The notes under the pieces were generated by a model. The model was not told where the DNA came from and did no database searches. It saw only the letters and a list, made by a program, of their open reading frames with translations. A DNA stretch of 64,000 bases from Octopus sinensis (taxonomy: Eukaryota). A program made the position numbers and the translations under genes. The stretch lies in NCBI RefSeq assembly GCF_006345805.1, contig NC_043020.1, positions 13,020,001 through 13,084,000 on the forward strand, in the 5' to 3' direction. Of this stretch, positions 45,469-48,865 are shown piece by piece; position 1 is the first letter of the stretch; the number at the start of each line of letters is the position of its first letter.

Positions 45469-48400
45469 GCCATAGCGCTCACTGTTGTCTCGTAGCCGCG
45501 GACATTGAGCCCAATGGCGCCCAGAGCGAGCTCTGGTCGCCATAGCGCTCACTGTTGTCTCGTAGCCGCGGACATTGAGCCCAATGGCGCCCAGAGCGAG
45601 CTCTGGTCGCCATAGCGCTCACTGTTGTCTCGTAGCCGCGGACATTGAGCCCAATGGCGCCCAGAGCGAGCTCTGGTCGCCATAGCGCTCACTGTTGTCT
45701 CGTAGCCGCGGACATTGAGCCCAATGGCGCCCAGAGCGAGCTCTGGTCGCCATAGCGCTCACTGTTGTCTCGTAGCCGCGGACATTGAGCCCAATGGCGC
45801 CCAGAGCGAGCTCTGGTCGCCATACGCGCTCACTGTTGTCTCGTAGCCGCGGACATTGAGCCCAATGGCGCCCAGAGCGAGCTCTGGTCGCCATAGCGCT
45901 CACTGTTGTCTCGTAGCCGCGGACATTGAGCCCAATGGCGCCCAGAGCGAGCTCTGGGCCATAGCGCTCACTGTTGTCTCGTAGCCGCGGACATTGAGCC
46001 CAATGGCGCCCAGAGCGAGCTCTGGTCGCCATAGCGCTCACTGTTGTCTCGTGCCGCGGACATTGAGCCCAATGGCGCCTAGAGCGAGCTCTGGTCGCCA
46101 TAGCGCTCACTGTTGTCTCGTGGCCGCGGACATTGAGCCCAATGGCGCCCAGAGCGAGCTCTGGTCGCCATAGCGCTCACTGTTGTCTCGTAGCCGCGGA
46201 CATTGAGCCCAATGGCGCCCAGCGAGCTCTGGTCGCCATAGCGCTCACTGTTGTCTCGTAGCCGCGGACATTGAGCCCAATGGCGCCCAGAGCGAGCTCT
46301 GGTCGCCATAGCGCTCACTGTTGTCTCGTAGCCGCGGACATTGAGCCCAATGCGCCCAGAGCGAGCTCTGGTCGCCATAGCGCTCACTGTTGTCTCGTAG
46401 CCGCGGACATTGAGCCCAATGGCGCCCAGAGCGAGCTCTGGTCGCCATAGCGCTCACTGTTGTCTCGTAGCCGCGGACATTGAGCCCAATGGCGCCCAGA
46501 GCGAGCTCTGGTCGCCATAGCGCTCACTGTTGTCTCGTAGCCGCGGACATTGAGCCCAATGGCGCCCAGAGCGAGCTCTGGTCGCCATAGCGCTCACTGT
46601 TGTCTCGTAGCCGCGGACATTGAGCCCAATGGCGCCCAGAGCGAGCTCTGGTCGCCATAGCGCTCACTGTTGTCTCGTAGCCGCGGACATTGAGCCCAAT
46701 GGCGCCCAGAGCGAGCTCTGGTCGCCATAGCGCTCACTGTTGTCTCGTAGCCGCGGACATTGAGCCCAATGGCGCCCAGAGCGAGCTCTGGTCGCCATAG
46801 CGCTCACTGTTGTCTCGTAGCCGCGGACATTGAGCCCAATGGCGCCCAGAGCGAGCTCTGGTCGCCATAGCGCTCACTGTTGTGTCTCGTAGCCGCGGAC
46901 ATTGAGCCCAATGGCGCCCAGAGCGAGCTCTGGTCGCCATAGCGCTCACTGTTGTCTCGTAGCCGCGGACATTGAGCCCAATGGCGCCCAGAGCGAGCTC
47001 TGGTCGCCATAGCGCTCACTGTTGTCTCGTAGCCGCGGACATTGAGCCCAATGGCGCCCAGAGCGAGCTCTGGTCGCCATAGCGCTCACTGTTGTCTCGT
47101 AGCCGCGGACATTGAGCCCAATGGCGCCCAGAGCGAGCTCTGGTCGCCATAGCGCTCACTGTTGTCTCGTAGCCGCGGACATTGAGCCCAATGGCGCCCA
47201 GAGCGAGCTCTGGTCGCCATAGCGCTCACTGTTGTCTCGTAGCCGCGGACATTGAGCCCAATGGCGCCCAGAGCGAGCTCTGGTCGCCATAGCGCTCACT
47301 GTTGTCTCGTAGCCGCGGACATTGAGCCCAATGGCGCCCAGAGCGAGCTCTGGTCGCCATAGCGCTCACTGTTGTCTCGTAGCCGCGGACATTGAGCCCA
47401 ATGGCGCCAGAGCGAGCTCTGGTCGCCATAGCGCTCACTGTTGTCTCGTAGCCGCGGACATTGAGCCCAATGGCGCCCAGAGCGAGCTCTGGTCGCCATA
47501 GCGCTCACTGTTGTCTCGTAGCCGCGGACATTGAGCCCAATGGCGCCCAGAGCGAGCTCTGGTCGCCATAGCGCTCACTGTTGTCTCGTAGCCGCGGACA
47601 TTGAGCCCAATGGCGCCCAGAGCGAGCTCTGGTCGCCATAGCGCTCACTGTTGTCTCGTAGCCGCGGACATTGAGCCCAATGGCGCCCAGAGCGAGCTCT
47701 GGTCGCCATAGCGCTCACTGTTGTCTCGTAGCCGCGGACATTGAGCCCAATGGCGCCCAGAGCGAGCTCTGGTCGCCATAGCGCTCACTGTTGTCTCGTA
47801 GCCGCGGACATTGAGCCCAATGGCGCCCAGAGCGAGCTCTGGTCGCCATAGCGCTCACTGTTGTCTCGTAGCCGCGGACATTGAGCCCAATGGCGCCCAG
47901 AGCGAGCTCTGGTCGCCATAGCGCTCACTGTTGTCTCGTAGCCGCGGACATTGAGCCCAATGGCGCCCAGAGCGAGCTCTGGTCGCCATAGCGCTCACTG
48001 TTGTCTCGTAGCCGCGGACATTGAGCCCAATGGCGCCCAGAGCGAGCTCTGGTCGCCATAGCGCTCACTGTTGTCTCGTAGCCGCGGACATTGAGCCCAA
48101 TGGCGCCCAGAGCGAGCTCTGGTCGCCATAGCGCTCACTGTTGTCTCGTAGCCGCGGACATTGAGCCCAATGGCGCCCAGAGCGAGCTCTGGTCGCCATA
48201 GCGCTCACTGTTGTCTCGTAGCCGCGGACATTGAGCCCAATGGCGCCCAGAGCGAGCTCTGGTCGCCATAGCGCTCACTGTTGTCTCGTAGCCGCGGACA
48301 TTGAGCCCAATGGCGCCCAGAGCGAGCTCTGGTCGCCATAGGCGCTCACTGTTGTCTCGTAGCCGCGGACATTGAGCCCAATGGCGCCCAGAGCGAGCTC

Positions 48401-48744
48401 TGGTCGCCATAGCGCTCACTGTTGTCTCGTAGCCGCGGACATTGAGCCCAATGGCGCCCAGAGCGAGCTCTGGTCGCCATAGCGCTCACTGTTGTCTCGT
48501 AGCCGCGGACATTGAGCCCAATGGCGCCCAGAGCGAGCTCTGGTCGCCATAGCGCTCACTGTTGTCTCGTAGCCGCGGACATTGAGCCCAATGGCGCCCA
48601 GAGCGAGCTCTGGTCGCCATAGCGCTCACTGTTGTCTCGTAGCCGCGGACATTGAGCCCAATGGCGCCCAGAGCGAGCTCTGGTCGCCATAGCGCTCACT
48701 GTTGTCTCGTAGCCGCGGACATTGAGCCCAATGGCGCCCAGAGC
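45469..48744. repeat. GC-rich (44/70) 70-bp satellite, about 47 nearly identical monomers, each with a 30-nt palindrome
   Basis: Monomer catagcgctcactgttgtctcgtagccgcggacattgagcccaatggcgcccagagcgagctctggtcgc; period 70. Confidence 0.98.
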
Positions 48745-48865
48745 CCAGCTCAATAGACTCCTTATACCCTAAGGAAGGCATGTGTAAAATTTGAATGAAA
48801 TTGGTTGAGTAGTTCTCAAGTTATAGGGAAATACACAGACAGACAGAGACACATTCTCAGATACA
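48745..48865 (+). mobile_element. Helentron/HINE-like 3' module directly following the satellite
   Basis: aaaatttgaatgaaattggttgagtagttctcaag...acagacagac; paralog at 52247-52380. Confidence 0.55.

What the first reader, a model, noticed from the sequence alone, without database searches (positions are those of the whole stretch)
45469..48865. GC-rich palindromic 70-bp satellite apparently born inside a Helentron-like element
Seen: about 47 near-identical monomers (63% GC, 7 CpG each, no visible CpG decay) in an AT-rich intron. Each contains ATGGCG-C-CCAGAGC-GA-GCTCTGG-T-CGCCAT (13 pairs plus one mismatch) and a CATTG/CAATG mini-hairpin. The array starts at the end of the right arm (gccat), stops exactly at the hairpin apex (ccagagc), and runs into a HINE-like 3' module. 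Inference: the right arm arose by fold-back copying of the left arm followed by a template switch at gccat, creating a self-amplifying unit. Established: Helitron/DINE central repeats expand into satellites in Drosophila. The array would give a CpG-island-like, cruciform-prone block and a highly structured sense-strand intronic RNA.
Basis: partly seen in the sequence, partly recalled or inferred. Interest (0 to 1): 0.75.

Follow-up and report, generated by a model that had tools for sequence, protein, structure and literature searches.

The report
Palindromic 70-bp satellite on octopus transposon
A real, very clean 3.3-kb array of a GC-rich 70-bp repeat with two hairpins sits in the tandem-repeat slot of a transposon-like module, and the whole arrangement recurs on at least eight Octopus vulgaris assembly sequences, so it is an inherited transposon-borne satellite rather than something born in this intron.

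Summary
There are 46.8 copies of a 70-bp unit at 45469-48744, 99% matching, 63% GC, 7 CpG per unit, and a 13-bp+1 palindrome.

The array is not private to this locus. Translating it found 13 Octopus vulgaris "hypothetical proteins". Through them I fetched 13 further arrays at 11 loci on 8 assembly sequences. All share one layout: a conserved upstream block of at least 5 kb (up to 17-19 kb between L010 and L011), a variable microsatellite, a roughly 25-nt linker, the 70-mer array, a core+(CAGA)n module, and a 29-bp AT-rich satellite of 3-21 kb.

The module family has CTAGCAG... hairpin-bearing terminal inverted repeats. One 3.15-kb member has an empty site in paralogues and carries a Pif1-type helicase remnant. 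This supports a Helitron/Helentron-like (HINE/DINE-1-like) affiliation, although several defining features are not met.

Monomer variants show two compensatory double changes, one in each hairpin, plus G.T intermediates. The palindromes are therefore actively maintained.

The fold-back origin remains plausible but unproven. All arrays share their ends by descent, the flank already holds a GAGC/GCTC mini-palindrome, and the only "solo" copy may be an array remnant.

Verdict: a new cephalopod member of the known class of transposon-borne satellites, with an interesting structural twist.

The parts
39633..44430 (+). Upstream block of the multi-copy unit. It is a mosaic of decayed transposons, including a frameshifted mariner-like transposase at about 42430-43540. 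Homology to the paralogues starts right after the assembly gap N 39533-39632.
   Evidence: 94-96% identity over 3.8-4.9 kb to the same position upstream of the arrays in L004b-L012. Translation shows HTH_32-type and DDE-type remnants.
44431..45443 (+). (GCCAA)n microsatellite, about 1 kb, occupying the microsatellite slot upstream of the array. Paralogues carry (GCCAA)n, (AAAT)n, (CTG)n or (GTT)n at this position.
   Evidence: period 5, 211.6 copies. Comparison of paralogues.
45444..45468 (+). Conserved linker of about 25 nt (CTCCTGTTAATAGTGGTGCGAACAAA) between the microsatellite and the first monomer. It may be a degenerate piece of monomer.
   Evidence: Present with variants in L006, L008a, L009, L011, L012, L013 and L014. 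L006, L007 and L012 keep degenerate monomer fragments upstream of it.
45469..48744 (+). 70-bp satellite array of 46.8 units. Each unit has hairpin A (GCTCACTGT/ACATTGAGC) and hairpin B (ATGGCGcCCAGAGC GA GCTCTGGtCGCCAT).
   Evidence: Thirteen homologous arrays elsewhere.
48745..48887 (+). A-type flanking module: junction flank CCAGCTCAATAG..., the conserved core GTGTAAAATTTGAATGAAATTGGTTGAGTAGTTCTCAAG..., (CAGA)3, and the tail ...GAATGAGAGTGGGTGAT. The final GGGTGAT matches the start of the reverse complement of the family's inverted repeat.
   Evidence: 85-93% identical modules follow 14 of 14 arrays. L004a diverges from the window right after the T run, which marks an element boundary.
48888..48895 (+). 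T8 run at the module boundary.
   Evidence: T runs of variable length occur at the same place in L004a and L008a.
48969..49152 (+). 'postA' segment between the A-type module and the AT-rich satellite. It is shared with L008a, L008b and L004.
49152..52208 (.). 29-bp AT-rich satellite (TATATATATGTATATAAATATATACGAAT). It is a constant neighbour of the 70-mer array at the loci mapped (all but L009, where no long array lies next to it), where it is 3-21 kb long.
   Evidence: 49412-52209, 97.7 copies..
52209..52246 (+). Solo 38-nt piece identical to monomer positions 22-59 (CTCGTAGCC...CCCAGAG). It abuts the AT-rich array on its left and lacks GAGCTCTGGTCGCCATAGCGCTCACTGTTGT.
52247..52381 (+). B-type copy of the flanking module (core plus (CAGA)3 plus tail).
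52382..52421 (.). palB: the 15+15-nt palindrome CTAGCATTATGACCC-tgtcgatgcc-GGGTCATAGTGCTAG. It is homologous to the terminal inverted repeat of the helicase-linked element E.
52426..53008 (+). postB segment followed by a second short array of the 29-bp AT-rich satellite (52595-53008).
33207..33660 (+). A more distant member of the same element family, showing the family plan: inverted repeat CTAGCAGCATAGCCCGGCATTGCCCGGGT, about 335 nt of internal sequence, the core, then (CAGA)n.
1956..2354 (+). 5' inverted repeat and the first ~400 nt of an E-like element (CTAGCAGTATCGCCCGGCGTTGCTCGGGT...).

Best explanation
The array is a transposon-borne satellite of Octopus vulgaris or a very close relative.

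What is shown:
- The array occupies the tandem-repeat slot, upstream of a conserved core+(CAGA)n module, of a non-autonomous element.
- That element's family has CTAGCAG... terminal inverted repeats that each contain a small hairpin.
- The family is linked to a Pif1-type helicase, so it is Helitron/Helentron-like, with a HINE/DINE-1-like architecture.
- The 70-mer arose once. All 14 arrays examined share the same orientation relative to the module, and most share the start (GCCAT), the end (CCAGAGC|CC.GCTC) and the linker.
- The array was then copied around the genome as part of a very large composite unit. That unit comprises at least 5 kb (up to 17-19 kb) of decayed transposons, the microsatellite, the linker, the 70-mer array, the module and kilobases of a 29-bp AT-rich satellite.
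- After dispersal each array evolved in concert. Arrays have private consensus variants and range from 2 to 62 units.

What is inferred:
- Local expansion and contraction occur by unequal exchange or replication slippage.
- The two hairpins per unit are kept complementary by templated correction within quasi-palindromes (intra-strand template switching or hairpin mismatch repair), or by selection for the hairpins.
- The founding duplication junction (TGGTC, or GAGCTCTGGTC) was most likely made by snap-back synthesis primed from the pre-existing GAGC/GCTC mini-palindrome. GCCAT then served as the microhomology for the template switch.
- How the giant unit itself moves is not resolved. It could be rolling-circle read-through or transduction, or it could be segmental duplication.
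For: - Array anatomy.
- Multi-locus occurrence: the translated array hits 13 O. vulgaris proteins. Loci L004-L014 from GCA_951406725.2 hold 13 more arrays on 8 assembly sequences.
- Flanks: the same module lies downstream and the same linker and microsatellite slot upstream. Two module subfamilies exist, A and B.
- Upstream block: 94-99% identical for 5 kb up to 17-19 kb.
- Neighbouring satellite: a long 29-bp AT-rich array lies next to the module at all loci mapped except L009.
- Concerted evolution: each array has its own consensus monomer.
- Covariation in hairpin B: a T-A pair becomes C-G. Monomer counts are T/A 178, C/G 82, T/G 6 and C/A 0.
- Covariation in hairpin A: a T-A pair becomes C-G only in L011, and an A-T pair becomes G.T in an L005 variant.
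- Pair counting: 2 pairs changed on both sides, against 0 in all six slid controls, with 94% of cells paired.
- Element family: the 3152-nt insertion E (L008 50489-53640) has 27/29-matching terminal inverted repeats and an empty site in L010 and L011.
- Helicase link: E carries a Pif1 2B-domain ORF, E=1.5e-14.
- Shared termini: palB, the window elements at 1956 and 33207, and an L011 element share this inverted repeat.
- Published layout: HINE/DINE-1 elements are described as inverted repeat+IR, GTCY microsatellite, core, central repeats, 3' hairpin and a T-rich target (PMC4067079; PMC7492417; PMC2374699).
Against: - No inverted repeat or other 5' terminus of the 70-mer-bearing element was found in the conserved block upstream of the window array. 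The element that 'owns' the array is therefore not delimited.
- Element E inserts between A and T, with terminal and symmetric 29-nt inverted repeats. That is neither the canonical Helentron layout (TT target, subterminal asymmetric repeats) nor the canonical Helitron layout (no inverted repeats, 5'-TC).
- Only a helicase fragment was seen. There is no Rep and no endonuclease.
- The covariation rests on two events. L012 carries two stem-disrupting changes, and the window's own monomer has a C.T mismatch in hairpin A.
- The solo 38-nt copy may be a remnant of an array rather than an ancestral single unit.
- The resemblance of the core to DINE-1 and to lepidopteran (GTCY)n elements is from my memory and was not tested.
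Confidence: 0.6

Rival explanations
1. The satellite was born in situ in this intron inside a single Helentron-like insertion. Its end at the hairpin apex reflects a recurrent, self-amplifying fold-back mechanism.
For: The junction-specific 11 nt are complementary to the left arm. The array starts at GCCAT and stops at CCAGAGC. Three non-canonical junctions elsewhere also lie within 0-7 nt of the apex: the start of the second L014 array, the start of L004a and an insert in L009.
Against: Thirteen further arrays with the same ends, linker, module and at least 5 kb of shared flank exist on 8 assembly sequences. The array and its ends were therefore inherited by duplication of a large unit. The apex-breakpoint pattern is post hoc, with n=3 and a rough p of about 0.01.
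Confidence: 0.05
2. Gradual origin of the palindrome. An ordinary tandem duplication included the flank ...CCAGAGC-CCT-GCTCCTGAC.... The imperfect inverted repeat was later perfected stepwise inside the array by quasi-palindrome template-switch mutations and homogenisation. No one-step fold-back was involved.
For: Both flank subfamilies keep GAGC..GCTC at the same offset as the monomer. L011 has a hybrid junction, CCAGAGCGAGCTC|CTGACACTCC, and L004b has a duplicated GCTCCTG. Ongoing compensatory changes show that such correction does operate in this repeat.
Against: The alignment of the 14 nt after the apex with the flank is not significant beyond the 4-5 nt GCTC match. No intermediate monomer types with a partly perfected arm were seen among 13 variant classes.
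Confidence: 0.3
3. Not transposon-driven. The 70-mer, the 29-bp AT-rich satellite and their flanks form a satellite-rich block spread by segmental duplication or ectopic recombination, and the neighbouring transposon-like module is an incidental old insertion.
For: The shared unit is huge, with 5 kb to more than 17 kb upstream plus 3-21 kb of AT-rich satellite. It has variable far ends and is a mosaic of unrelated decayed transposons. L008 is an inverted duplication around a 15-kb AT-rich array. No element termini enclosing the array were found.
Against: The module always abuts the array directly and in one orientation. Related elements (33207-33660, E) show the same plan of inverted repeat, internal repeats, core and (CAGA)n. 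The microsatellite-spacer-array-flank order matches the published HINE layout.
Confidence: 0.2
4. The palindromes are binding sites for a dimeric protein or serve another host function, such as a boundary, a replication element or a centromere-like element. The array is kept by selection on that function.
For: Compensated changes in both stems. CpG observed/expected is 1.0 against 0.66 for the background. The unit holds four 6-bp palindromes: AGCGCT, CCGCGG, GGCGCC and GAGCTC.
Against: Array length varies from 2 to 62 units between paralogues. Stem-breaking variants are fixed in L012. No match to any Rfam family reached a meaningful score. Symmetric change in both half-sites is not what conservation of a protein site predicts.
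Confidence: 0.1

Closest known systems
Cg_HINE elements of Crassostrea gigas, and pearl/DTC84/MgE of other bivalves (Vojvoda Zeljko et al. 2020, PMC7492417)
   Same: The order is the same: left flank ending in a microsatellite, a short variable spacer, a satellite-like tandem array in fixed orientation, and a conserved right flank with a hairpin or inverted repeat and a T-rich boundary. Related flanks can carry unrelated arrays, as here with the 70-mer versus the 29-mer next to A/B modules. Both hosts are molluscs.
   Different: The monomer is 70 bp and 63% GC, against 140-180 bp. Arrays reach 62 units, whereas the bivalve arrays are mostly 5 or fewer. The monomer is built of two hairpins with compensatory changes. 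No complete short element with both ends was found. The array travels inside a composite unit of more than 20 kb.
DINE-1/INE-1 and DINE-TR1 of Drosophila (Yang & Barbash 2008, PMC2374699; Thomas et al. 2014, PMC4067079)
   Same: Both have an inverted repeat with an adjacent partial or complete IR hairpin, a GTCY-type microsatellite, a conserved core next to it, a variable central repeat that can expand into satellite DNA, and stem structures kept by compensatory mutations. Both are linked to a Rep/helicase-type autonomous family.
   Different: Sequence homology of the core was not tested (it is my recollection only). The octopus inverted repeats are about 29 nt, terminal and symmetric. The documented insertion is between A and T, not TT. 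In the octopus family plan the core and (CAGA)n lie far from the 5' inverted repeat.
Canonical Helitrons
   Same: Element E ends ...hairpin-8 nt-CTAG, which fits 3' CTRR with a palindrome about 10 nt upstream. It inserts between A and T and carries a Pif1-type helicase remnant (background in PMC4067079).
   Different: E starts with CTAG rather than TC, and it has 29-nt terminal inverted repeats, which canonical Helitrons lack.
Quasi-palindrome template-switch mutagenesis and snap-back templated insertions at repair junctions (established knowledge, cited from memory: Ripley 1982; polymerase-theta end joining)
   Same: It explains both the complementary junction bases and the coupled changes in the two arms of a hairpin.
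   Different: It is a mutational process, not an element family. Its action here is inferred from sequence patterns only.

Membership tests
HINE / DINE-1-like non-autonomous Helentron | 5' (sub)terminal inverted repeat with an adjacent complementary IR | tested here: inconclusive
   palB next to B-type modules (52382-52421) is a 15+15-nt repeat-plus-IR hairpin, homologous to the inverted repeats of E. However, it lies on the module side of the array. It can be read either as the 3' repeat of the array-bearing element or as the 5' repeat of the next element. The window array's own A-type module lacks it. No inverted repeat was found upstream of the array.
HINE / DINE-1-like non-autonomous Helentron | GTCY-type microsatellite within a conserved flank or core | tested here: met
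   (CAGA)3 on the plus strand, equal to (GTCT)3 on the minus strand, directly follows the conserved core in all 15 modules and in the relatives at 33543-33660 and in E.
HINE / DINE-1-like non-autonomous Helentron | Central tandem repeats in constant orientation, preceded by a microsatellite and a short variable spacer | tested here: met
   14 of 14 arrays have the same orientation relative to the module. A microsatellite plus a ~25-nt linker lies upstream. This was compared with the published layout.
HINE / DINE-1-like non-autonomous Helentron | 3' subterminal inverted repeat followed by a short stem-loop 8-60 nt from the 3' end | tested here: not met
   In E the 3' inverted repeat is terminal and contains the small hairpin itself. 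The A-type module ends with only GGGTGAT, a 7-nt match to the reverse complement of the repeat (note).
HINE / DINE-1-like non-autonomous Helentron | Insertion into TT or oligo-T without target duplication | tested here: not met
   The one filled/empty pair (E in L008 versus L010 and L011) shows A|CTAG...CTAG|T in an AT-rich site, with a 6-nt difference (TGTATA) and no TT. A T run does follow the A-type module.
HINE / DINE-1-like non-autonomous Helentron | Autonomous partner encoding Rep-helicase-endonuclease with the same termini | tested here: inconclusive
   Only a 164-173-aa Pif1 2B-domain fragment was found inside an inverted-repeat-bounded 3.15-kb derivative. No Rep or AP-endonuclease occurs in the ~0.5 Mb fetched.
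Canonical Helitron | 5'-TC, 3'-CTRR, a 3' palindrome about 11 nt from the end, an A|T target and no inverted repeats | tested here: not met
   The 3' CTAG, the hairpin and the A|T target are met. The 5' end is CTAG, and 29-nt terminal inverted repeats are present.
Satellite DNA in the classical sense | Long head-to-tail arrays of a monomer, multi-locus, evolving in concert | tested here: met
   Arrays run from 0.15 to 4.4 kb at 12 loci. Each array has private consensus variants. Total genomic abundance was not measured.

The most novel reading that the evidence does not exclude
The two hairpins of the monomer are functional single-strand DNA (or plus-strand RNA) signals of a rolling-circle-type element family with hairpin-bearing CTAG termini. 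On this reading the array is a multiplied replication or termination hairpin cassette. Its structure is under selection, seen as compensated substitutions with G.T intermediates only on the plus strand. Its hairpin tips act as preferred breakage and template-switch points that drive both array growth and the read-through mobilisation of the giant composite unit.
Probability: 0.15. Interest if true: 0.75.

Novelty: new member of a known kind. Interest (0 to 1): 0.45.

Why it matters
Transposon-borne satellites are well documented in Drosophila and bivalves. I found no description of one for cephalopods, whose genomes are unusually repeat-rich.

This case offers three things:
- A dated natural experiment. 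There are more than a dozen paralogous arrays with 94-99% identical flanks, in which array turnover, concerted evolution and hairpin-preserving double substitutions can be measured.
- A candidate sequence-level record of how a satellite unit is founded, namely a duplication junction complementary to the adjacent arm.
- A previously undescribed octopus element family with CTAG/hairpin terminal inverted repeats, tied to a Pif1-type helicase. It blurs the Helitron/Helentron definitions.

There is also a practical point. The O. vulgaris annotation contains at least 13 protein models, among them an 'MTO1 homolog' model, that match a translation of this satellite.

Tried and rejected
- Exact-pattern scans for a 20-nt piece of the monomer. 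The metagenome scan gave only three chance hits in a bacterial gene (L001-L003). The viral scan gave none.
- nhmmer with the module profile. The apparent hits in the window (h1-h11) turned out to be an unrelated abundant SINE-like family that matched through GT-rich low complexity.
- Protein search with the FN3-like ORF, to fix the host gene and the intron status. No homologue was found.
- Protein search with the translated module, to find solo elements. No hit was found.
- Search for a second copy of the CTAGCA inverted repeat upstream of the arrays. None was found within 12-28 kb.
- My first idea was that the module is the 5' flank of a minus-strand HINE with palB as its 5' subterminal repeat (note). 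I weakened this after element E and the copy at 33207-33660 showed the family plan: inverted repeat, internal repeats, core, (CAGA)n on the helicase-sense strand.
- My second idea was that palB is a canonical Helitron 3' end. I rejected this because E has symmetric inverted repeats.
- Test of homology between the post-apex monomer and the flank. It was not significant beyond GCTC.
- Rfam search. Only far-sub-threshold miRNA-like hairpin hits were found.
- Supplements of the HINE papers. They hold no usable consensus sequences, and Table S2 is illegible. The recalled similarity of the core to DINE-1 could therefore not be tested.
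Full report
**1.

Tandem Repeats Finder reports one array at 45469-48744 with period 70, 46.8 copies, 99% matches and no indels in the consensus alignment. Parsing the array gives 46 full monomers. Thirty-six are identical and ten differ by 1-2 nt, mostly single-base indels.

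The unit is 62.9% GC with 7 CpG, in a window of 36.9% GC. CpG observed/expected is 1.01 in the array and 0.66 elsewhere.

The palindrome ATGGCG-c-CCAGAGC GA GCTCTGG-t-CGCCAT is present, and its last five bases are the first five of the next unit. Single-strand folding gives two hairpins per unit, with z-scores of -2.1 to -4.1 against dinucleotide shuffles.

Upstream lie a 1-kb (GCCAA)n microsatellite and a 25-nt linker. Downstream lie a ~140-nt module and a T8 run.

**2. A second copy of the module in the window**

At 52209-52246 there is a 38/38 match to monomer positions 22-59. It is followed by CC and an 89%-identical copy of the module. This copy is preceded by a different array, a 29-bp AT-rich satellite at 49412-52209, not by 70-mers. 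It is followed by a 15+15-nt palindrome (52382-52421).

However, it retains only 38 nt, ending at the same junction as the arrays. It may therefore be the last, truncated monomer of a former array and not an ancestral state.

**3. The organism, and other arrays**

Direct DNA scans of the public collections were useless for a eukaryotic repeat. Translating the array on the minus strand, where there is one stop per 210 nt, gave a usable query. It found 13 'hypothetical proteins', including one 'MTO1 homolog' model. All are from Octopus vulgaris, on chromosome-sized records.

Eleven look-ups returned loci L004-L014 from assembly GCA_951406725.2. They contain 13 further arrays of the 70-mer, from 147 nt to 4365 nt, on eight assembly sequences. 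The window is a twelfth locus.

**4. A common architecture**

Oriented like the window's plus strand, the loci share this order (L004a, L008b and L009 are partly truncated or rearranged):
- A conserved block, 94-99% identical over at least 5 kb and up to 17-19 kb between L010 and L011.
- A microsatellite whose motif varies between paralogues: GCCAA, AAAT, CTG or GTT.
- A linker of about 25 nt.
- The 70-mer array.
- The module, consisting of junction flank, core, (CAGA)3 and tail.
- Either an 'A' continuation (tail, T run and postA) or a 'B' continuation (palindrome palB and postB).
- A long array (3-21 kb) of the 29-bp AT-rich satellite, seen at every locus except L009.

In the window the homology with the paralogues begins immediately after the assembly gap at 39533-39632. 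The upstream block is a mosaic of decayed transposons, including a frameshifted mariner-like transposase at about 42430-43540 and LINE reverse-transcriptase fragments. L008 holds two units in inverted orientation around a 15-kb AT-rich array, and L014 holds two array+module units in tandem.

Consequence: the array was not born in this locus. It was inherited with a very large multi-copy unit. Because all arrays descend from one founder, the uniform array ends (start GCCAT, end CCAGAGC|CC(A/T)GC(T/C)C) are not independent evidence for a recurring mechanism.

**5. What kind of element is the module?**

Published HINE/DINE-1 features are:
- a (sub)terminal inverted repeat with an adjacent IR;
- a GTCY microsatellite in a conserved flank or core;
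- central tandem repeats preceded by a microsatellite and a variable spacer;
- a 3' repeat with a stem-loop;
- T-rich targets;
- Rep-helicase-endonuclease partners.

In the fetched loci I found a cleanly delimited relative. L008 50489-53640 is a 3152-nt insertion, called E here, that is absent from the paralogous units in L010 and L011. Its empty site reads ...ATATATCA[tgtata]TATGTGAATAG....

E has ~29-nt terminal inverted repeats, CTAGCAGTATCGCCCGGCGTTGCTCGGGT / CCCCGAGCAACGCCGGGCAATTCTGCTAG. Each contains a small CCCG/CGGG hairpin. About 100 nt from its 3' end E carries the C-terminal part of a Pif1-type helicase ORF (Pfam Pif1_2B, E=1.5e-14).

The same inverted repeat starts elements at window 1956 and 33207 and after the AT-rich array in L011. 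It is always preceded by A. palB is a homologue of this repeat with the inner hairpin extended to the whole repeat.

The plan of the family, on the strand where the helicase is sense, is: inverted repeat, internal repeats, core, (CAGA)n, and then further sequence.

Against strict membership:
- The documented target is A|T, not TT.
- The repeats are terminal and symmetric.
- No Rep or endonuclease was seen.
- No inverted repeat was found upstream of any 70-mer array within 12-28 kb.

I therefore call the family Helitron/Helentron-like with a HINE-like architecture, and not a demonstrated Helentron. The similarity of the core to DINE-1 and to lepidopteran (GTCY)n elements is my recollection only. 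I could not test it.

**6. The monomer evolves under a hairpin constraint**

Each array has its own consensus. This is concerted evolution after dispersal.

Thirteen recurrent variant classes were aligned (A2) and scored against the two-hairpin structure. 94% of cells are paired. Two pairs changed on both sides while keeping Watson-Crick pairing. All six slid controls gave zero such pairs.
- In hairpin B the T-A pair next to the outer end is C-G in L008a, L008b, L009 and part of L004b. Over 266 monomers the states are T/A 178, C/G 82, T/G 6 and C/A 0.
- In hairpin A, L011 has GCTCACTGC/GCAGTGAGC instead of GCTCACTGT/ACAGTGAGC. An L005 variant has an A-T to G.T change.
- The wobble intermediates are G.T on the plus strand only. 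With so few events this is a weak hint.

Counter-examples exist. L012 fixed two stem-breaking changes, and the window-type monomer has a C.T mismatch in hairpin A.

My rough estimate is that two perfectly compensated partner pairs among 13 variable columns would arise by chance with p of about 1e-3. This is an inference, not a tool result.

The coupled changes can be explained without selection, by template switching or mismatch correction within quasi-palindromes. Selection for the hairpins is the alternative.

**7. Origin of the unit**

The bases that exist only between units are GAGCTCTGGTC. If the (A)GCTC shared with the flank is counted as pre-existing, only TGGTC is array-specific. Both flank subfamilies read CCAGAGC-CC(A/T)-GCTC..., so a 4-bp GAGC/GCTC mini-palindrome was already present.

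A 3' end at ...GCTC snapping back on GAGC and copying the left arm would produce TGG(G)CGCCAT. The GCCAT so made matches the GCCAT at the start of the unit, which would allow the switch that creates a tandem duplication. It is still only an inference.

A gradual route is not excluded: an ordinary duplication including GCTCCTGAC, later perfected. The hybrid junctions in L011 and L004b are compatible with it.

The left edge of the arrays is not pristine. Degenerate monomer fragments lie upstream of the linker in L006, L007 and L012.

Three non-canonical junctions fall 0, 3 and 7 nt from the hairpin-B apex: an insert in L009, the start of the second L014 array and the start of L004a. This hints, post hoc, that the hairpin tip is a preferred breakpoint.

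**8. What remains unknown**

- How the giant unit spreads: rolling-circle read-through or transduction, or segmental duplication.
- Where the 5' end of the array-bearing element is.
- Whether the window array lies in an intron. The FN3-like ORF at 24017-24436 has no database homologue.
- The genomic abundance of the 70-mer.
- Whether it is transcribed or methylated.

No Rfam family matches the array or its surroundings. I found no literature on octopus satellites of this type.

**9. Verdict**

This is a real feature with an ordinary class: a satellite carried in the tandem-repeat slot of a rolling-circle-type non-autonomous element, as known from Drosophila and bivalves. It is new for cephalopods and has three unusual aspects:
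- a double-hairpin GC-rich monomer with compensatory evolution;
- a junction that looks templated by snap-back synthesis;
- carriage within a composite unit of more than 20 kb next to a long AT-rich satellite.

Noticed in passing
window 49152-52208, 52595-53008, 53502-54219; L004-L014: A 29-bp AT-rich satellite (TATATATATGTATATAAATATATACGAAT), nearly self-complementary, forms arrays of 3-21 kb next to the 70-mer array at nearly every locus. In L008 two complete units lie in inverted orientation around a 15-kb array of it.
   Followed up: partly
L008 50489-53640, with fragments in L004, L007, L010, L011 and window 1956-2354: A 3.15-kb element has ~29-nt terminal inverted repeats starting CTAGCAG, each holding a small hairpin. 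It carries a Pif1-2B helicase fragment, and its site is empty in two paralogous units. The target is A|T, with a 6-nt difference at the site. It fits neither the canonical Helitron nor the canonical Helentron definition.
   Followed up: partly
P0001-P0013 (O. vulgaris GCA_951406725.2 annotation): Thirteen annotated proteins match a translation of the 70-bp satellite. They include a model named 'protein MTO1 homolog, mitochondrial' (P0006). These are probable annotation artefacts.
   Followed up: no
window 44431-45443 versus L004b-L014: The microsatellite slot upstream of the array holds different motifs in paralogous units: (GCCAA)n, (AAAT)n, (CTG)n, (GTT)n, or mixtures. In L007 the (CTG)-like repeat appears to be overwriting degenerate 70-mers.
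   Followed up: partly
window 1552, 16223, 16644, 17648, 25105, 30633, 37510, 38459, 39653, 55171, 63475 (approximate starts): About eleven copies of an abundant SINE-like repeat of ~300-400 nt occur in the window. Its reverse strand reads ...GACTGCGGCCATGCTGGAGCACCGCC..., and it contains an internal (TG/TA)n stretch. It is unrelated to the finding.
   Followed up: no
window 39533-39632: An assembly gap of 100 N lies exactly where homology to the paralogous units starts. The window copy of the unit may therefore be mis-joined or truncated there.
   Followed up: no
window 42430-43540 (+): A decayed mariner-like transposase with an HTH_32-type N-terminus, a DDE-type C-terminus, and several stops and frameshifts. 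It is part of the conserved block upstream of all arrays.
   Followed up: partly
window 24017-24436 (-): A 139-aa ORF with a fibronectin-type-III-like sequence found no relative in the 5.8-billion-protein index. It is either an unannotated exon or a chance ORF.
   Followed up: partly
window 45469-48744 (each monomer): The 70-bp unit contains four 6-bp palindromes that are restriction-site-like: AGCGCT, CCGCGG, GGCGCC and GAGCTC. About one would be expected by chance.
   Followed up: no
window 57784-57798 (+), 58289-58303 (-), 62613-62627 (-): The 15-mer CCATAATTATGACCC recurs three times. Two of the copies form an inverted pair ~500 nt apart, which may be the ends of a small inverted-repeat element.
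   Followed up: no
window 59214-59957 and 60343-61023: There are two near-identical ~0.7-kb segments, each with a ~500-nt (ATG)n tract. This looks like a local tandem duplication about 1.07 kb apart.
   Followed up: no
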